A stretch of DNA of 63,844 bases, counting the filler, from Octopus bimaculoides (taxonomy: Eukaryota), in the NCBI RefSeq assembly GCF_001194135.2. It is 5 parts of 5 records of this genome, joined end to end, with 100 filler letters (N's around TTAATTAATTAA, not from the genome) between each part and the next. Parts side by side here need not be neighbours in the genome. Positions count along the whole stretch, not along the records: positions 46,629 to 55,852 come from NC_068981.1; 4 more parts are not named here. The stretch is one strand, 5' to 3'. Under the pieces are notes generated by a model. That model was not told the origin of the DNA and did not search any database. It saw nothing but the letters and a program-made list of their open reading frames with translations. The position numbers and the translations under genes are program-made. Shown one piece after another: positions 26,381 through 55,896 of the stretch (its first letter is position 1; every line of letters begins with the position of its first letter).

Positions 26381-26879
26381 TATACAGCCGTCTAAATATT
26401 CTATTCACAAGTAATTGGTGATTTTGAGAGCAACATTTTTTTTACACTCAGCCACTCTGCAACAACTGTATTATTTTCTTGTATATTACCTTTATATGTA
26501 GCTAAATAATGCTGTTGAAACAATATATAATACTATCTCTAGGCAGGATTGCTCTGGGTTAAATGTTCATGAGAAATGAATGTTTACATTACAACACAGG
26601 AAACATCGAAGGAATATTTTCAATTTCTGCTAGGTACAAGTAAATTGAACCTGCTATTACTTTTTAATAGTGAAAATAAAATCATAAATGTGTTGTTTGG
26701 TTGCCCAGTGGCGATTAGCATTTCATTAATGTTAGTGATAAGTAGAACTTTCAATATCAACTACTTGAAAACATAATCCATTAACCAGTAGCTAATGCTC
26801 CAGAATGGCCTAAGTCTACTGACTGATACGAGTAAAAGGGTATAAAACAAAAAAGATATATATATACACGCGCGTGCGC

Positions 26880-26923
<44 letters not shown>

Positions 26924-27048
26924 CAAATAATAAATGAGTATATGCATATATACGTACATGTATGTACATACTTACATCTACCTGTATATATAGATGCATA
27001 TCTGNNNNNNNNNNNNNNNNNNNNNNNNNNNNNNNNNNNNNNNNNNNN

Positions 27049-46584: not shown

Positions 46585-47154
46585 NNNNNNNNNNNNNNNN
46601 NNNNNNNNNNNNNNNNNNNNNNNNNNNNCAAATGTATCAAATTTAACGATTATTTTATGTTGCTATTTTTAACACACAAGCACACAGACACAGATACAGA
46701 AACAGACACACACACAGACACACACACAAACACACACACACACGCACACGCACACACACACACACACACAGAGACGTATCCTGTTTCATTTATTCAAAGT
46801 TTACATCAGCAGGAAATCTTATTGCTAGTTCTGCATATGCATTGTTTTCCTCGCTTACTGACACCAAATTCAACACATAGATCAAAGATTTTACAGTAAT
46901 TAAATTTGTATTAGCATAATACATATCAATATATTGCATCATTATTATTGATATACAACATCTGTAGTAATTAATTAAATTAGCTAATTTATTTTAGTCC
47001 ATAAAGTAATAGTTTAACTTGTGCATTTCAATAAGATACTCACATTTGTCGTTCCACTCTTAAAGTAATCTTTACTAATTCTTGTTTAAATTAACTTTCA
47101 TATGCATTCCATTATTCTAACAGTCATAAATAACAATTACAATGTTTAAAATAA

Positions 47155-47160
47155 TTTATT
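47155..47160 (-). promoter_or_regulatory. Candidate polyadenylation signal of the TLR
   Basis: AATAAA on the minus strand about 72 nt after the TGA; the region is very AT-rich, so a chance match is possible. Confidence 0.35.
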
Positions 47161-47231: not shown

Positions 47232-47472
47232 TCAGTCTTTTAGCTGTAAAGAATGTTTTAGATTTTTCCAGAACATTTCTTGAGCAATTTCATTTTCTTT
47301 TGGAAATTCAATGTAACTCTGATTCTTTATCTGTTCAAGTATTGGTAATGGCAGCTGTCTGTGTGGTACCTGCTCCAGTACCACAATAATTACTATATTT
47401 CTTTCGGTATGAATATATTCCATTTTAGCTAAGTTATATTCAAACATACACCATTTACTTTCCACAAAATAT
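47232..47472 (-). CDS. Toll-like receptor, terminal exon encoding the C-terminal half of the TIR domain
   Basis: YFVESKWCMFEYNLAKME...NIVIIVVLEQVP...ILEQIKNQSYIEFP...FWKNLKHSL* has the TIR S.WC.FE, hydrophobic beta-strand, YIE.P and FW motifs; preceded by the acceptor ttattttgttctcttgcag (phase 2). Confidence 0.92.
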
Positions 47473-47779
47473 CTGCAAGAGAACAAAATAAAATATCAAT
47501 GAACAATTCCGTATGTCAATAGTTTCTTAAAGCTTCAAATAAACTTCTAATAAAAGAACTGATATTGCTATTTGTAGTTTCATACTGTTCATTTTCCCAA
47601 TATTATTTTATATTATCAGATGTACTCGTTATACTGATTATGTAGAAACATTTTTGTTAAACTTGTGCGACTCAACTTACTGCACTTTATTGTGCAGTAG
47701 ATTTGTAATTCCGTTCGCATAAATTTTCATTTTAACAAAGACAAATGCCTAAATTCGAACTGTTCCATGTTTTCTATGA

Positions 47780-48460
47780 TGTGCGAAATTTTAGAAACTC
47801 TTAACTATTATTTGAATAGAAATATTTTTAAGATGTAATATTTCGATATATTTTTGTATTTTGGAACTTCCACCCCCATTGAAAACTGGTAGGTGACCAT
47901 TATTCCCTACTGAAGGAAGAGTTTTGTAAATGTAAACTATGTTGTGGAAACAGTCTATTAATTGCAATTTTCACGTTAGTAGAAAGATGATGACTGGTAG
48001 AAATTGCCGGAAATCGCGAGACAACAAAATTCTGAATCCACCCACGATATTGGTGGTATTTCGGAACCTGTTAAAGGGCAACTGAGGGTTTCAAAGACAA
48101 GTTTTATCTCATAACTACAGCTTAAGAATATTCAGCTGTCCAGATATTTTGGCAATATTAGATACAGGATTGTGTGCAATGTTGTATTGTAGTTTAATAC
48201 GAGAATGAATATCCTATGGAATTTCAAATGACACCAATGCAATAGTAATGTACTTGAGTGAATTTTGCCAAAATTATGTTGATCAAATAGATTATCCCTT
48301 TAACCTAGAAACGTCATAGAAAACTATTCTAACCAAGTTAGACGCCACCAACAGTTTAATACTTGTATAAGTTTTATTATTTTTATCTGAAACCAGGAAT
48401 AGTTAAATTAGTGGGCATATGTTCCAGTTGTTGGATATCGTAGTTTATTGTCTAAAGAAT
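47780..48460 (-). pseudogene. Decayed LRR-coding sequence (TLR ectodomain-like) with stops and frameshifts
   Basis: Manual translation gives LEHMPTNLTIPGFR*K, RLTWLE*FSM, LILPKYLDS*IFLSCSYEIKLVF...PLTGSE...EFCCLAISGNF and KYIEILHLKNISIQII, in the same order as motifs in molluscan TLR ectodomains. Confidence 0.55.
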
Positions 48461-48763
48461 CTCTTGGCATTAACATACATACATACATACATACATACAT
48501 ACAGTCAAAAATACCCTGTTGTCCATGTTGGAATTCCAATAAAGTTAACCTTGTATCTATGTTACAAGCCGTTTCTTTCTCTATTGGAAAGAAATCTTGG
48601 AATAAACTAAATAATGACATACATACATACATGCATACATGCATACATACATACATACATACANNNNNNNNNNNNNNNNNNNNNNNNNNNNNNNNNNNNN
48701 NNNNNNNNNNNNNNNNNNNNNNNNNNNNNNNNNNNNNNNNNNNNNNNNNNNNNNNNNNNNNNN

Positions 48764-49656
48764 GATGTATAATTTAGATAAAATGCTTCTCTCGCATATA
48801 AGGGCATTCCAAGATTATTCCTAGCAATGATATTACTGAGGGCAAGATATTCAAGATGATGAGTTGACTGGAAACTTTTGAAGAAATTATTGTCTCCATC
48901 ACGAACATTATTATATGAAATATCTAGAACTGTTAGATTATTTAAATATTGAAATGATTTTTTATTAATTACATGTATTTCAGAGTAACTGAGATTCAAG
49001 TAGACGACATATGGTATATTCTGAAAGGAGCCACCCGTGAGAGTGTACAACATTGATTTATTCCGCTTTGTAGCAAAGCTAACATACTTTAAGTTTGACA
49101 GTTTTGTATACTCCACTCCAAAGTAACTATATTTATTACCTGTCATAGATAATTGTTCCAGTGAAGTTAAATGAGAAATAGTTTTACCGATATAAGTCGT
49201 AGATATGTTTGATAAGTTACCTCGTAATTTCAGAATTTTCACCTTAGTTAAATTTTGAAAGAGCTTTATAGGAAAAGAAACATAATTGATAGATAGTCGG
49301 TTGTACTCCAACGAGAGTTCTTTCAAGGACCACAAACCTTGAAAGGTGGTCGGTTGAAAACATTCAAGAAGATTATCATCAAGTTTCAGCACCTCTAATA
49401 AATTTAAATGTCTCAAGCTATCCGCTGGAATACTTTTAATACGATTTCGACTTAAATCTATTGACGTAGCATTCTTTGGAAAAGTATCAGGTATTTGAGT
49501 TAGATTTTGGTCTGTACAGATTACAGTACAGCGGTTGAAAATAATCTCAGTACAGTTGCAAACATCAGGGCAGTCTGTTCGACAATTTGCAGTCACTTTA
49601 ATAAATGTTTTCATGAAGTAAGCAAAAGCTAAAATGAATATTCCCTTCATTGCCAT
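48764..49656 (-). CDS. Toll-like receptor ectodomain, 5' part (signal peptide, LRRNT, about 9 LRRs); 3' end lost in a gap
   Basis: About 297 uninterrupted codons: hydrophobic leader, CPDVCNC...VIC.DQNLTQIP cap, repeated LxxLxLxxNxL units (ATSIDLSRNRI, LEVLKLDDNLL, LKELSLEYNRL, LTVLDISYNNV), many N-glycosylation sequons; same strand as the TIR exon. Confidence 0.92.
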
Positions 49657-50074
49657 GTAGATATCTTCATGCCTATAATAAAAGAAATATAAATAGTTTT
49701 AGCTTGGCAATATTTAGTGGAAATCTATGATAGCTCAAAGTCTGATTAAATATGCACATAATAGACAGAAAGAAATATATCTTACATACAAGTGATAAGG
49801 GAAAATTAAAAAACAGGAATATATTTGTTGCTAATCTTAAGCGAGATGTAATTGAAAATATATAATTTTTAATGTCATATAAAATATGATAAAATAACGA
49901 ACGCAAGTGTTTTAAGGAGTTAATGTATGGATATATACATACAGTTGTTTCAGTGTAGTTTATTCACTTCATAATATTTTACCAATTAGTAGTATTCATT
50001 TATACACATTTCCTAGTAATACCACTAGATAGAGAAGTTAAACGTTGGGAAACTAAAATCATAGCGGCCAGACG

Positions 50075-50595
50075 AACGAGTGTGGATGTTGGGTCGAAGG
50101 TCGCGGAAATGTTTGAGTGCACGCAGCCCCTCGTGGTGAGGGATTACCGTGTAAGAGCTCTGGATTTCAAGAGTGAAAAGAAGTTTAGAGGGGCCAGGAG
50201 GGAAGGAGAAAGAGGTAAACAAATGAAGCGCATGGTTGGTGTCATGGATGTGAGAGGGGAGGGAAGCCACAAGGGGGCGGCAAGGACACGGTCAAGATAT
50301 CTGGAGATGAGTTCGGTGGGGCAGTTTCAGGCGGAGACGATGGGGCGGCCAGTGTTGTTAGGTTTGTGGATTTGGGAGAGGAAGTAAATAGTGGGAGTGC
50401 GAGGGGTGCGGATAATGAGGTTGGAGGTACTGGGGGAGACGGGAGGAGGAGATGAGGTCATGGATAGTGGAGGACACAGTCTGTTGGTAGCTGGGCATGG
50501 AGTCAGAGGGCAGAGGGCAGTAGAAGAAGGTGACTTGAAGTTGGCGGAGAGCTTCCGCCTTGTAGAGGTCCGCACGCCACACCACCACGATGAAC
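50075..50595 (-). mobile_element. Penelope-like (Neptune-type) reverse transcriptase fragment
   Basis: VVWRADLYKAEALRQL, TPRTPTIYFLSQIHKPNNTGRPIVSA, SLPSHIHDTNHAL, LLFTLEIQSSYTVIPHHEGL. Confidence 0.9.
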
Positions 50596-51207
50596 TACTT
50601 GAGATACTTAGTCAGCGCCATGAAACGTGAGAAAATATGATGCGTTTTTCACATTTTCTAATATTGTATACATGTACACGTAGCTTTAAATGTAAAAAGT
50701 GTCATCTTCAATAGAATTTCTTAATTTGTCGTACATGTATATTTTAGCTGACATTTTAATTGCCAGCATCAGTATCCATTACGCATTTAAGATAAGGTAC
50801 GGTAGGATAGGGTATTGAGATATTTTGAATGAGGAGGGTGGTCGATGCGGTAGGTGAAGTAGCTAAAGGATGTCGATGCAGAAGGAAAAGTGGATAAAGT
50901 GGATGTCGATGTAGAAGGAAAAATGGCTGAAGTGGGTCGATATGGAAAGAGAAGTGGTTAAAGGGGGTCGATGGTCGGAAAAGTTTGGTGAGCCCCTACT
51001 TTATATGTTCTCAAGAAATATTAGTCGTCTTAGAAAAGCAGAGTAAAGAACCAATAGGGTGCTCTACAGTGGAGACTACAATATGTTGGGGGTATTTAAT
51101 ATAGTTTAGAAGCCATAGTTACGAGATATATATACGTACACACACACACACACGGATGCACGCACACACGCACACACACATATTCACACACACACTCATG
51201 ATTATTT

Positions 51208-52211: not shown

Positions 52212-53714
52212 NNNNNNNNNNNNNNNNNNNNNNNNNNNNNNNNNNNNNNNNNNNNNNNNNNNNNNNNNNNNNNNNNNNNNNNNNNNNNNNNNNNNNNNNN
52301 NNNNNNNNNNNNNNNNNNNNNNNNNNNNNNNNNNNNNNNNNNNNNNNNNNNNNNNNNNNNNNNNNNNNNNNNNNNNNNNNNNNNNNNNNNNNNNNNNNTA
52401 TATATATATAGATAGATAGATTCAGATGAATATAATACTTAAGTTGAGGCACCAGAATTTAATACGGTAGTATCCATACAATTTCATAATAAGGTGATTA
52501 AAAGCAAAATAAGCAACAAGGATTTCCAGAGGTAATGCAGTACGATCGCTTCACGCAACTCCATTTAATTGAACAATGCAATCGTTACATCAATTTAAAT
52601 GCAGAGCAATCCTCAGCTGCATAAAGACACAAAATTGAATTAAATTAAAACAGATAGACACATTAGTATAATTTTACCTAAAATCTCCAAGAAGGTAAGG
52701 AGATAGACAAAGAACATGCTGCCTTCACTTCAGCTTAGAAGCTACTAAGGTATCAGGAAGAAAGACTTGTTACAGATTTTGTTATCACTGTTTTATGGGG
52801 TCAGTTTTAATTTATAGACTAGTTTTATCAATTTTTTTTATATCTAAGATCGAGAGAACAAGGAGCAGTGTCTGTTAGGAATGAGGCTGAGGGAGTCGGC
52901 AGAAATCATAGTGGGTATAGTCATAAAAAACTATCAAGATTTATTAGAAGCAATATCATGAGATTTGTAAAGGAAAACTTAAATCAAGATATTAGCTGAC
53001 AATTAAGGGGGTCGGCCACTAGCAGACTATTGATAATGAAACAGGGGAAATCTTATCATGTAGTACTATAATTCAATATTTTAAACAATATTGCCATATT
53101 GTATAAAGTTAAAGTTTAGGGTTATTCAGAAGATTATTGAGAAGAATATTATATAAAAAAGGATAAAAAGCTTTTTTCTTTCTTGAATACTTTTGAGTAT
53201 ATACCAAACTTTTACCACAATAGAGGGAGGAAAATAAATTATCTAGAAATAGTTTAATATTTATACATATTATATACTTAAATACTAACTTATCAGATGG
53301 TATCTGTGAATATTGATCAATTGGTATATTCTAGTATTTAATAAAGGAGTACTGAGCTAAAAGAACATGCTAACTTTATATTAATTAAAATTATAATCTA
53401 AGCACTTTAGCTTACGTATTGAATATACCAGTATAAGTATGAATTTATAGAGGTACAAACATTAGATTAATTTTATAAACAAATAAAGGCTATTATAAAA
53501 TAATAATAAAAATAATCAGGTAGGAGAGAACAGCACCATTCCTAACAGACATTGCTCCTTGTTCTCTCGGCCTTAGATATACAAAGATTTGATAAAACTA
53601 GTCTCTAAATTAAAACTGACCCATAAAACAATGACAAGCAAAATCTGTAACAAGTCTTTCTTCTTGATACCTTAGTAACTTCCAGATACCCAGCGTTGCT
53701 CGGGATTAAAATGG

Positions 53715-54320
53715 CAATTTTTTTGTTGTTGCTGTACTTGTTTCGGTCATGTGAGTGCTGCCATGCTGGTGTACCGCCTTTAGTCGAAAACATCGACCGC
53801 AGGATTTATTCTTTGTAAGTCTTGTACTTCACTGCATGCTTTTTCTAACCTAGTATCATCAGCTTACTTTGTCAGATTCATCCTCTTCTTTATTGGTATC
53901 AGATTTGCTGGCACTTCTTCGTTTGATTGCACAAGTTTGCTATATTGCTCTGTAACAGTATTCCTGATATTTTTAATATAAATGAATGGAAATCATTGTT
54001 TTAACATCCACTTTTCCATGCTCACATGGGTCTGAAAGTTTATTCAGTCAGATTTCCTGCAGCTGCATGTCCTTCCTGTTGCCAAATATTACCTTTTTCC
54101 AAGCAAGGTAATATTTCCCCATGGCCAGACATTTATCTTTTCTTTCGCATAATTGTTTCACATTTTGACACAAGGCCAGCAAATTTTAAGGATGGGGCCA
54201 AGTCAGTTACGTTCACCCTCCAAAATTCTATTGGTTTATTTTTCCAAACGGCTCAGTTACAGGGACGTAAACATAGCAACATCGGTTGTCAAGCGATAGT
54301 GGGTGTACAAACACAGATAT
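53715..54320 (-). mobile_element. Two OR-type SINE fragments (53715-53829 and about 54165-54320) separated by unrelated sequence
   Basis: Both match parts of the standard SINE tail on the minus strand. Confidence 0.7.
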
Positions 54321-54399
54321 ATACAGAAATATATACATATATATAAATATTTATATACATATGTATACATATATATACATATGTATATATATACATATA

Positions 54400-54502
<103 letters not shown>

Positions 54503-54569
54503 TTATATACACGTAGATGTATATACATACATATATATATGTATATATACATATATATATATATACAAC

Positions 54570-54710
54570 TGTCTCTCACTCTTTCTACCTGTTTCTCTTG
54601 TACCTGTATTTCAATCTGCCTCAGTGTCCATGGAGTGCTCAGCCACTTGCACGTTAATTTTCCGAGCAGGCTGTTACGTTGACTGGATCAACTGGGACCC
54701 TCGTCGTATA
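54570..54710 (+). mobile_element. OK-type SINE 3' fragment
   Basis: ggagtgctcagccacttgcacgttaattt...ggatcaactgg matches 22955-23020. Confidence 0.8.
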
Positions 54711-55073: not shown

Positions 55074-55632
55074 TGACTTTATTACGCATGCTAGCCACCG
55101 GTATGAAAAATTTTCTAAATTTCCTACTCTTATTATTTTCACAGTAAAATTTTCGTAGTTTCAAAGCCTTTCTGGGGCGCAGTTTTAATTTTTTTATTAT
55201 TATTTGCTGCCGGATGTAACTGCACTTGCGCGGTGGATTTGAAAATTATAATGTGTAAGTATGTAGCATGTGTATTTTCGGTGCTATTTGCTGCATAAAT
55301 ATACATTCATTTTAGCGCATTCACTGAAGAAGTACGGATGGCAAATTAATTTATTTTGCACATTGATACAGAAACTCGAGTCTGAGGGTAACTACAAAAA
55401 TATTTTTTAAATTTTCATTCCTTTTGAAATTGCTCTTATTCGTGGTTTGGGCTTTAACTGCCCTTTCTAGTTGTAAGATGTCCTGTTAAAGGTCACCTCT
55501 ATCGTGTATAAATACGTAAATTGTTTATAAACTATTATATAGGAAAATATGTTGTCTACTGACTTTATTACGCATGCTAGCCATCAGTATGAAAATTTTC
55601 CTGAATTTCCTACCCTTATTATTTTCACAGTA
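55074..55632. repeat. About 73-bp direct repeat (55074-55146 and 55560-55632)
   Basis: gactttattacgcatgctagcca...tattattttcacagta occurs twice. Confidence 0.85.
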
Positions 55633-55645
55633 TATATGTATACAC

Positions 55646-55697
<52 letters not shown>

Positions 55698-55896
55698 ACA
55701 CACACAAGTATATATATACATACATATGTATACATATATATATATGCATACATACATATGTATACATATATATACATACATACATATGTATACATATATA
55801 TATACATATGTATATGTACATATATAAGTATGTAAATATACAAATATATACANNNNNNNNNNNNNNNNNNNNNNNNNNNNNNNNNNNNNNNNNNNN

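What the first reader, a model, noticed from the sequence alone, without database searches (positions are those of the whole stretch)
47232..49656. Toll-like receptor with intact ends but no visible transmembrane segment or TIR box 1
Seen: 297 open codons of ectodomain and an open 79-codon TIR exon with a canonical acceptor, only about 1.3 kb apart including a 100-N gap. No LRRCT, TM helix or N-terminal TIR half is readable in between. Established: a membrane TLR needs several hundred more residues here. Inference, three models: (a) the gap is much longer than 100 bp and hides the rest of exon 1, possibly through collapse of tandem paralogues; (b) the halves belong to different paralogues; (c) the gene makes a TM-less, secreted LRR decoy. 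Model (a) is the most parsimonious; (c) would be the novel outcome.
Basis: partly seen in the sequence, partly recalled or inferred. Interest (0 to 1): 0.7.

Follow-up and report, generated by a model that had tools for sequence, protein, structure and literature searches.

The report
Octopus Toll-like receptor broken by assembly gap
The "Toll-like receptor without a membrane segment" is an assembly artefact: two contigs from a tandem cluster of octopus Toll-like receptor genes are joined by a placeholder gap, and the two halves most likely belong to different gene copies.

Summary
On the minus strand, a 298-codon signal peptide/LRRNT/LRR reading frame runs open into the 100-N gap. An intact 79-codon exon encoding the C-terminal half of the TIR domain lies 1.2 kb beyond the gap. 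Nothing coding lies between them.

The piece is 100% identical to Octopus bimaculoides chromosome CM046601.1. That assembly is the 2015 short-read assembly re-scaffolded with Hi-C, without gap closing, and its pipeline has a "default gap of 100 bp". The gap size therefore carries no information.

All three complete relatives examined (two in gap-free O. vulgaris, one 20 kb away in O. bimaculoides) have the same two-exon structure. Exon 1 holds LRRs, LRRCT, the TM helix and the N-terminal half of the TIR domain. Exon 2 holds the C-terminal half. About 450 codons plus 0.67 kb of intron would have to lie where the gap is.

The two halves differ in ancestry. The LRR head is "beta-type": 77% identical to the neighbouring full-length TLR, 59–61% to alpha-type genes. 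The TIR exon and its intron are "alpha-type": 98.7% identical to O. vulgaris, 53% to beta. An alpha-type exon 1 with the TM helix and TIR boxes 1 and 2 sits 17 kb upstream on the scaffold, and its half of the intron fits this one to within 16 nt.

A TM-less receptor is not supported. RefSeq XP_052821640.1 contains this junction only because the model jumps the gap.

The parts
48764..49672 (-). Exon A. It begins at the first base after the acceptor (AG at 49674-49673); the ATG is at 49656. It encodes signal peptide, LRRNT and about 9.5 LRRs, 298 codons in all, and is cut by the contig end. It is the head of a beta-type TLR paralogue ('gamma').
   Evidence: Pfam LRR_8 E 7e-29. It is 77% aa / 85.6% nt identical to the head of XP_014770880.1, colinear to the last residue. 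It is only 59-61% identical to alpha-type heads. There is no stop or indel over 894 nt, with dS 0.21 and dN/dS 0.72.
49658..50062 (-). 5' flank of exon A (intron with acceptor). It is homologous to the same region upstream of the neighbouring beta gene, and the homology stops here.
   Evidence: 85% nt identity over 412 bp to L002 47346-47744. No further upstream homology was found.
48664..48763 (.). Assembly gap of exactly 100 N. It is the default placeholder of a Hi-C (HiRise/juicebox) join, so its true size is unknown.
   Evidence: It is the only 100-N run among the 15 N runs of the 62.9-kb locus L002; the others range from 10 to 2692 N. The supplement of PMC9068888 says the assembly is Hi-C on the old shotgun assembly with no gap closing, and mentions a 'default gap of 100 bp'.
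48609..48663 (-). (TGTA)n microsatellite at the start of contig c3. It lies in the middle of an alpha-type TLR intron.
   Evidence: It aligns to O. vulgaris L001 25087 onward and to L003 10914 onward.
47475..48608 (-). The 3' part of the alpha-type intron. It is non-coding.
   Evidence: 87-89% nt identical and colinear with the O. vulgaris alpha introns. All frames are closed and Pfam finds nothing.
47232..47472 (-). Exon B. It is the terminal exon: 1 nt completing a split codon, 79 codons and TGA. It encodes the C-terminal half of the TIR domain, including box 3 (FW), and is alpha-type.
   Evidence: PDB TLR1 TIR residues 77-155, E 4.7e-9. It is 98.7% aa identical to exon 2 of both O. vulgaris alpha genes, with 1 nonsynonymous and 3 synonymous differences (dN/dS 0.07), and 53% identical to the beta tail.
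47155..47160 (-). AATAAA polyadenylation signal about 75 nt after the stop codon.
   Evidence: Read directly from the sequence.

Best explanation
The locus is a tandem cluster of two-exon Toll-like receptor genes in Octopus bimaculoides, and the short-read assembly could not resolve it.

**Normal gene structure.** In each complete gene, exon 1 encodes signal peptide, LRRNT, LRRs, LRRCT, the TM helix and the N-terminal half of the TIR domain (boxes 1 and 2). A phase-2 intron of about 2.3 kb follows. Exon 2 encodes the C-terminal half of the TIR domain.

**What the finding joins.** It joins two contigs across a default 100-N Hi-C join.
- Contig c2 ends inside exon 1 of a beta-type paralogue ('gamma'), after codon 298. 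From about that point the paralogues become too similar for the assembler to separate.
- Contig c3 starts at a microsatellite in the middle of an alpha-type intron. It carries the only intact alpha-type terminal exon at the locus.

**Which gene exon B belongs to.** It most likely belongs to the alpha-type gene whose exon 1 lies 17-20 kb upstream on the same scaffold, outside the piece. That exon 1 includes the TM helix and TIR boxes 1 and 2.

**Consequence.** The TM-less, box-1-less receptor is therefore a scaffolding chimera of two paralogues, not a gene product.

**Shown versus inferred.**
- Shown: the identity of the assembly, the gene structure of complete relatives, the different affinities of the two halves, the fit between the two intron halves, and the stop codon in the other alpha-type tail.
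- Inferred: that exon B is spliced to the upstream alpha exon 1. The true physical order of the contigs is also not established. Exon A's contig may be misplaced, or it may really sit inside the alpha intron.
For: 1. **Source.** The piece equals GCA_001194135.2 CM046601.1 (L002 21606-30829) at 100% identity. The locus has 15 N runs in 62.9 kb.
2. **Assembly method.** It is the short-read assembly plus Hi-C, scaffolded with HiRise and juicebox, with no gap closing and a default 100-bp gap.
3. **Complete relatives.**
   - O. vulgaris L001 has a 748-codon exon 1 (22178-24421), donor AGCAG|GTAAGT, a 2317-bp intron and exon 2 (26739-26978). Together they give 827 aa with Pfam LRR_8 and TIR at 56.7 bits.
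   - L003 has the same structure.
   - O. bimaculoides beta (XP_014770880.1, 859 aa) also has it.
4. **Affinities.**
   - Exon A is 77% aa identical to beta and 59-61% to alpha heads.
   - Exon B is 98.7% identical to the O. vulgaris alpha tails and 53% to the beta tail.
5. **Colinearity.**
   - O. vulgaris alpha exon 1 and the 5' half of its intron match L002 7680-11105.
   - The 3' half of the intron, exon 2 and the 3' flank match c3.
   - Only 16 nt of the O. vulgaris intron lie between the two matches.
6. **Only intact tail.**
   - The other alpha-type tail at the locus (L002 18416-18652) is inverted, has an in-frame stop, and shows dN/dS 0.88.
   - Exon B shows dN/dS 0.07.
   - The alpha head P1 is an open 574-codon ORF with dN/dS 0.42-0.53, so it needs an intact tail.
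7. **Contig end.** c2 ends in a 50-nt run identical to beta, 56 nt before the block that alpha and beta share at 86% nt.
8. **Possible missing tail.** An orphan beta-type tail exists elsewhere in O. bimaculoides (A0A0L8FLX6, 84% identical to the beta tail). It could be the missing gamma tail.
Against: - **Scaffold layout fits one gene.** Exon A and exon B are adjacent, on the same strand and in the right order. If both shotgun scaffolds are large, the Hi-C join is probably right at this scale. One gene would then need only about 2 kb hidden, whereas two genes need roughly a repeat unit hidden or a misplaced contig.
- **Crossover predicts this layout.** Unequal crossing-over in an alpha-beta array predicts the order alpha, beta-head/alpha-tail hybrid, beta, which is the order seen.
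- **A second alpha copy is possible.**
   - The alpha exon-1 contigs P1 and P2 overlap at only 94.7% identity, and P2 carries a frameshift.
   - P2 may therefore not belong to P1's gene and could even be the missing middle of exon A's gene.
   - A second intact alpha-type tail could also be collapsed onto exon B.
- **Missing data.** No reads or transcripts could be examined.
Confidence: 0.6

Rival explanations
1. One gene with a hidden middle. Exon A and exon B would be the two ends of a single TLR gene, 'gamma'. The gap would hide about 1.35 kb of exon 1 (LRRs, LRRCT, TM, TIR boxes 1-2) plus about 0.67 kb of intron. This stretch would be unassembled or collapsed onto paralogues. The gene would be an old recombinant with a beta-type head and an alpha-type tail.
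For: - The two exons are on the same strand, in the right order and adjacent. The break points fall where an assembler would fail: at the entry into the block shared by the paralogues, and at a microsatellite.
- The order alpha, hybrid, beta is what unequal crossing-over predicts.
- Exon A has been kept open with no indels at dS 0.21, so its gene has or had a full-length body.
- Contig P2 does not match P1 in their overlap (94.7%), so it could be part of the missing middle.
- Gap sizes in this assembly are unreliable. A 313-N gap corresponds to about 0 bp in O. vulgaris, and a 10-N gap has flanks that overlap by 266 bp.
Against: - It would leave the alpha head P1, an open reading frame under constraint, with only a stop-containing inverted tail.
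- In both gap-free O. vulgaris genes an alpha-type tail goes with an alpha-type head.
- Homology between exon A's flank and beta's stops 405 bp upstream of the ATG. It does not extend over an intergenic unit, as a simple unequal crossover would predict.
- The alpha-type intron is already fully accounted for by P2 plus c3.
Confidence: 0.3
2. The scaffold is correct at face value. Exon A would then be a partial copy of a beta-type head lying inside a 19.5-kb alpha intron, together with transposon sequence and an inverted dead copy of the alpha tail. This is a sub-case of 'different paralogues'. In it exon A is a fragment, not part of a complete gene.
For: - The two halves of the alpha intron flank a 17.7-kb block. 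That block begins with a reverse-transcriptase-like element at the (TA)n repeat (L002 about 11160) and ends with exon A.
- Duplicated sequence around exon A is short, starting only 405 bp upstream of the ATG.
Against: - Exon A has no stop or indel in 894 nt at dS 0.21, while its 405-bp flank has several indels. That is not expected of an old dead fragment.
- The junction between exon A and the intron is a Hi-C placeholder, not sequence.
Confidence: 0.08
3. TM-less product. The gene would really splice the LRR head straight to the half-TIR exon, or make a secreted LRR decoy.
For: RefSeq XP_052821640.1 contains ...AFYLNYTS|YFVESKWC..., and TC + A happens to be in frame.
Against: - There is no stop and no GT donor at the end of exon A; the 'intron' of that model starts in the N run.
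- The model is a 1558-aa read-through that fuses at least three TLR fragments and a reverse-transcriptase-like ORF.
- The LRR pattern is cut in mid-repeat.
- Half a TIR domain lacking boxes 1 and 2 would not fold as a TIR (established knowledge of the TIR fold).
- All complete relatives carry LRRCT-TM-TIR.
Confidence: 0.02

Closest known systems
XP_014770880.1 'toll-like receptor 4' of Octopus bimaculoides (859 aa; 'beta'), encoded 20 kb downstream on the same strand
   Same: It is 77% aa identical to exon A over all 297 residues, without gaps. The 5' acceptor and 405 bp of flank are homologous. It has the same two-exon structure with the intron at the same codon of the TIR domain.
   Different: It is complete (LRRCT, TM, whole TIR). 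Its TIR C-terminal half is only 53% identical to exon B, and its intron is unrelated to the one next to exon B.
Octopus vulgaris tandem 'toll-like receptor 4' genes (CAI9715652-54; 'alpha-type'), OX597814.1 at 102.05-102.11 Mb
   Same: Exon 2 is 98.7% aa identical to exon B. The intron and 3' flank are 87-92% nt identical and colinear with contig c3, and the acceptor and phase are the same.
   Different: Their exon 1 is only 59-61% identical to exon A. They are annotated as TIR-only proteins of 160-173 aa, although uninterrupted full-length ORFs of 827-828 codons (stop excluded or included) are present.
RefSeq XP_052821640.1, 'uncharacterized protein LOC106882491' (1558 aa)
   Different: It is a read-through fusion. 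In order it contains an alpha LRRCT-TM-TIR-N fragment, exon A, part of exon B, a reverse-transcriptase-like ORF and the whole beta gene. The exon A/exon B junction jumps the N run.
Vertebrate TLR1/2/6/10 TIR domains and TLR3/7/8/13 ectodomains (solved structures)
   Same: Exon B aligns to the alphaC-to-C-terminus part of the TLR1 TIR domain (E 4.7e-9). Exon A aligns to TLR ectodomain LRRs, for example TLR13 at E 4e-29.
   Different: These are distant relatives, at about 30-35% identity by eye in the alignments. The ectodomain matches other LRR proteins such as IGFALS and LGR4/5 equally well. The name 'TLR4' is automatic naming, not orthology.

Membership tests
Toll-like receptor (LRR ectodomain, TM helix, TIR domain) | N-terminal signal peptide, LRRNT cap and LRR solenoid | tested here: met
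   Pfam LRR_8 E 7e-29. LRRNT scores 24.3 bits, just under its 25.8 cut-off. The N-terminus is hydrophobic, the cysteine cluster lies at residues 25-47, and about 9.5 LRRs are readable.
Toll-like receptor (LRR ectodomain, TM helix, TIR domain) | LRRCT cap and a single transmembrane helix | tested here: not met
   Both are absent from the piece, with no ORF and no Pfam hit in 47475-48663. Both are present in every complete relative, for example ...LNHTCSALIGIIIAISFGVVILIIFLVASLIY... in O. vulgaris and in O. bimaculoides contig P2. The absence follows from the assembly gap.
Toll-like receptor (LRR ectodomain, TM helix, TIR domain) | Complete TIR domain with box 1 (YDAF), box 2 (RDFxPG) and box 3 (FW) | tested here: not met
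   The piece holds only the C-terminal half, with box 3. Pfam TIR scores 15 bits, under its 21.3 cut-off. Boxes 1 and 2 (YDAFVIYA, RDFPVGK) lie on the upstream alpha contig and in the O. vulgaris orthologues. The full O. vulgaris protein scores 56.7 bits for TIR.
Toll-like receptor (LRR ectodomain, TM helix, TIR domain) | All parts belong to one transcription unit | not testable with these tools
   No reads or transcripts were available. The indirect evidence (different paralogue affinities of the head and tail, the fit between the intron halves) speaks against it.
Single-cysteine-cluster (V-type) TLR | One LRRCT next to the TM helix and no internal LRRCT-LRRNT pair | tested here: inconclusive
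   In the complete relatives the only cysteine cluster I could read lies before the TM helix (KCGCAQ...SKCTHPNG...HTC). No dedicated LRR classifier was run, and it cannot be judged for exon A's own gene.

The most novel reading that the evidence does not exclude
The most novel reading not strictly excluded is that the gene really makes a TM-less protein. In it the 298-residue LRR head would be spliced directly to the half-TIR exon, as in the RefSeq model, or would be released as a secreted LRR decoy. A milder novelty, at about 0.3 probability, is a genuine recombinant TLR with a beta-type ligand-binding head on an alpha-type signalling tail, produced by unequal crossing-over in the tandem array.
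Probability: 0.02. Interest if true: 0.5.

Novelty: not a real feature. Interest (0 to 1): 0.12.

Why it matters
**For biology: little.** Octopus TLR clusters are known and already annotated, and the missing TM helix and TIR box 1 come from the assembly.

**For annotation users.**
- The O. bimaculoides reference breaks this TLR cluster into contigs that mix paralogues.
- RefSeq carries a 1558-aa fusion model across it.
- The O. vulgaris annotation reduces full-length TLR genes (827 aa) to TIR-only proteins of 160-173 aa.
- Counts and classifications of cephalopod TLRs drawn from these annotations will be affected: 9 in O. bimaculoides (PMC8609888) and 14 in O. sinensis (cited in PMC12521104).

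**Possible follow-up.** If the head and tail do prove to be one gene, it would be an example of domain shuffling between tandem innate-immune receptors.

Tried and rejected
- **Word-indexed protein search.** The search for homologous proteins with exon A gave only three weak LRR hits (27-32% identity). With exon B it gave none. The index evidently lacks the cephalopod proteins, so the third search was not spent.
- **Six-frame translations by DNA reference.** Frames with X in place of stops were used for the stretch between the exons.
- **Look-ups not on record.** P0004 is a shorter isoform and P0006 comes from the 2015 annotation; neither could be located. The orphan beta-type tail therefore could not be placed.
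- **Mis-oriented block.**
   - I tested whether the inverted alpha-type tail is simply a flipped block that would restore a normal alpha intron.
   - The sequence upstream of it is a dispersed short repeat. It does not continue the RT-like element at the end of contig P2.
   - The tail also carries a stop codon. The idea is not supported.
- **Contig end as repeat collapse.**
   - I asked whether the contig end alone proves collapse onto the beta paralogue.
   - The last 50 nt are identical to beta, but a 158-nt identical run earlier in exon A did not break the contig.
   - The result is suggestive only.
- **Counting heads and tails.** Three heads and three tails at the locus at first suggested that exon A must own an alpha-type tail. 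The P1/P2 mismatch, the stop in the inverted tail and the O. vulgaris tandem array undo that argument.
- **Retroelement check.** Pfam finds nothing on the retroelement-like ORF at 50025-50630.
Full report
**1. Observation**

The gene lies on the minus strand.

*Exon A*
- The ATG is at 49656, preceded by an acceptor-like site (AG at 49674-49673).
- The frame stays open to the last base before the gap at 48764: 297 codons plus TC.
- It encodes a hydrophobic signal peptide, an LRRNT cysteine cluster and about 9.5 LRRs. Pfam gives LRR_8 E 7e-29 and LRRNT 24.3 bits.
- It has no LRRCT and no TM helix, and it is cut in mid-repeat.

*Exon B*
- An acceptor at 47474-47473 opens an exon of 1 nt plus 79 codons. 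The exon ends at TGA 47234-47232, with AATAAA shortly after.
- It aligns to residues 77-155 of the human TLR1 TIR structure (E 4.7e-9), and to TLR6, TLR10 and TLR2.
- It is therefore the C-terminal half of a TLR-type TIR domain with box 3. Boxes 1 and 2 are missing.

*Between them*
- The 1.19 kb from 47475 to 48663 has no open frame and no Pfam match at E<=10.

**2. The gap**

The piece is 100% identical to O. bimaculoides GCA_001194135.2, chromosome CM046601.1 (L002 21606-30829, reversed). I obtained this locus by looking up the RefSeq protein that contains both halves.
- The 62.9-kb locus has 15 N runs of 10 to 2692 N, and only this one is exactly 100 N.
- The assembly paper says the chromosome-scale version is the 2015 shotgun assembly plus Hi-C. 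[quoted passage not shown] The same pipeline description (the D. pealeii section of that note) speaks of 'the default gap of 100 bp' (PMC9068888 supplement).
- I infer from this that the 100 N marks a Hi-C join of unknown size. The paper does not say so for this particular gap.

The flanks are not continuous.
- One flank is coding to its last base.
- The other starts in a (TGTA)n repeat that aligns to the middle of an intron in O. vulgaris.

Other gap sizes at this locus are also wrong.
- A 313-N gap corresponds to about 0 bp in O. vulgaris.
- A 10-N gap has flanks that overlap by 266 bp.

**3. What a complete gene looks like**

A full HMMER scan with exon B found two useful relatives.
- O. 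vulgaris 'toll-like receptor 4' proteins of 160-173 aa, 99% identical to exon B. They carry the missing N-terminal TIR half (YDAFVIYA..., RDFPVGK...).
- XP_014770880.1 of O. bimaculoides, 859 aa.

The O. vulgaris loci contain no N (the assembly is ONT-based, PMC10700109) and show whole genes.
- In L001, an uninterrupted 748-codon exon 1 (22178-24421) encodes signal peptide, LRRNT, LRRs, LRRCT, the TM helix and the N-terminal TIR half.
- The donor is AGCAG|GTAAGT (phase 2), the intron is 2317 bp, and exon 2 is at 26739-26978.
- The protein is 827 aa, with Pfam LRR_8 and TIR at 56.7 bits.
- L003 holds a second copy with the same structure.
- The copies sit in tandem units of 24-27 kb that are 93-97% identical. 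A third unit lies between them.

The O. bimaculoides neighbour ('beta', L002 47746-49989 plus 52641-52877) has the same structure.

By these templates, about 450 codons (1.35 kb) of exon 1 would have to lie between the two flanks of the gap if they belong to one gene. With an alpha-type intron, a further 665 nt would be needed.

**4. The two halves have different ancestry**

*Exon A is beta-type.*
- It is 77% aa and 85.6% nt identical to the beta head, without a gap. The identity is mosaic: a 158-nt exact run, a middle at 60-80%, and the last 50 nt exact.
- It is only 59-61% identical to the alpha-type heads of either species.

*Exon B is alpha-type.*
- It is 98.7% identical to both O. vulgaris alpha tails and 53% to the beta tail. 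Its intron and 3' flank are colinear with the O. vulgaris alpha genes at 87-92%.

*An alpha-type exon 1 exists in O. bimaculoides, 17-20 kb upstream on the same strand and outside the piece.*
- Contig P1 (L002 7680-9724) holds an open 574-codon head. It is 85-87% aa identical to O. vulgaris alpha, with dS 0.15 and dN/dS 0.42-0.53.
- Contig P2 (9735-11407) holds LRRCT, the TM helix, TIR boxes 1 and 2, the donor and the 5' part of the intron.

*The intron halves fit together.*
- P2's homology to the O. vulgaris intron ends at L001 25070. Contig c3, which carries exon B, begins at L001 25087, so only 16 nt lie between them at a microsatellite.
- P2 plus c3 therefore make up a whole alpha-type intron. 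In the scaffold the two parts are 17.7 kb apart, with exon A's contig in between.

**5. Which gene owns exon B?**

The locus holds a second alpha-type tail (L002 18416-18652).
- It is inverted, has an in-frame stop (VPHR*LPLP), and shows dN/dS 0.88 against O. vulgaris. It is a dead copy.
- Exon B differs from O. vulgaris by one nonsynonymous and three synonymous changes, dN/dS 0.07.
- The constrained alpha head therefore has only exon B as an intact tail.

In both gap-free O. vulgaris genes, an alpha tail goes with an alpha head. An orphan beta-type tail exists elsewhere in O. bimaculoides (A0A0L8FLX6, 84% identical to the beta tail). It could be the true tail of exon A's gene.

I therefore favour, at about 0.6, that the two halves belong to different paralogues.

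**6. Why this is not certain**

- The halves are adjacent, co-oriented and in the right order.
- The contig ends fall where an assembler would fail. c2 ends 56 nt before the block that alpha and beta share at 86% nt. c3 starts in a microsatellite.
- Unequal crossing-over in an alpha-beta array predicts the order alpha, beta-head/alpha-tail hybrid, beta.
- P1 and P2 overlap at only 94.7% identity, and P2 has a 1-nt frameshift in the LRRCT. At least two alpha-type copies are therefore mixed here, and P2 could be part of exon A's missing middle.
- Exon A has no stop or indel at dS 0.21, while its 405-bp flank has several indels. It has been kept as part of a working gene, whose remainder must exist somewhere.
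- Against a simple crossover, homology between exon A's and beta's upstream regions stops after 405 bp.

I give the single-gene reading about 0.3, a real nested fragment about 0.08, and a TM-less product about 0.02.

**7. The RefSeq model**

XP_052821640.1 (1558 aa) strings together the following parts:
- the P2 fragment (LRRCT, TM helix, TIR-N);
- exon A, entered through the acceptor at 49672;
- part of exon B, joined as TC + A = Ser across the N run;
- a reverse-transcriptase-like ORF;
- the whole beta gene.

It is a read-through artefact.

**8. Verdict**

- The sequence features are real. The 'TLR without TM segment or TIR box 1' is not a biological feature.
- It is an unresolved tandem TLR cluster in a short-read assembly, joined by a placeholder gap, and probably joins two paralogues.
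- Novelty is nil for biology. It has some value as a caution for cephalopod TLR inventories.

Noticed in passing
L002 17129-18793 (O. bimaculoides, outside the piece): An inverted partial duplicate of the alpha-type terminal exon plus its 3' flank. It is 93% nt identical to exon B's region. It has an in-frame stop (VPHR*LPLP) and a dispersed short repeat inserted 134 bp upstream of the exon.
   Followed up: yes
L002 9459-10000 (O. bimaculoides): A 10-N gap whose flanks overlap by 266 bp at only 94.7% identity. The downstream contig has a 1-nt frameshift in the LRRCT. Two alpha-type copies appear to be stitched together.
   Followed up: partly
L001 22178-26978 and L003 8000-12726 (O. vulgaris): Full-length two-exon TLR ORFs (827 aa in L001) are annotated only as TIR-only proteins of 160-173 aa (CAI9715652-54). 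One isoform (173 aa, MQSDTWKLRY...) splices into the juxtamembrane region. This is either under-annotation or real TIR-only transcripts.
   Followed up: partly
L003 and L001 (O. vulgaris OX597814.1, 102.04-102.12 Mb): A tandem array of at least three units of 24-27 kb carrying alpha-type TLR genes. The units are 93-97% identical and the tails 99% identical, which suggests recent duplication or concerted evolution. The middle unit's gene was not seen.
   Followed up: partly
window 50025-50630, minus strand: A G+C-richer stretch with overlapping ORFs. One carries a motif (..SQIHKPNNTGRPIVSA..) that I recall from retroelement reverse transcriptases. It abuts the point where homology with the beta gene's upstream region ends. 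Pfam finds nothing.
   Followed up: partly
L002 11229-11405 and 32599-33072; L001 15687-16038: Copies of a reverse-transcriptase-like ORF (KWFSSIKDKSNTKFIQFDISSFY...). One starts exactly at the (TA)n repeat where the alpha intron is interrupted. Another is incorporated into the RefSeq fusion protein.
   Followed up: partly
window 49668-49670: An upstream out-of-frame ATG 12 nt before the main ATG opens a 7-codon uORF (ATGAAGATATCTACATGGCAATGA) that overlaps the start codon.
   Followed up: no
window 46680-46775, 48470-48500, 54290-54580, 55560-55850: Long microsatellites of (CA)n, (TGTA)n and (TA/TATG)n type. They generate most of the long 'ORFs' in the mechanical ORF list.
   Followed up: no
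L001 31122-36978, minus strand (O. vulgaris): Another annotated LRR+TIR gene (624 aa) lies tail-to-tail with the alpha array. It shows no tblastn match to the beta protein at E<1e-4, so it is a different TLR lineage.
   Followed up: no
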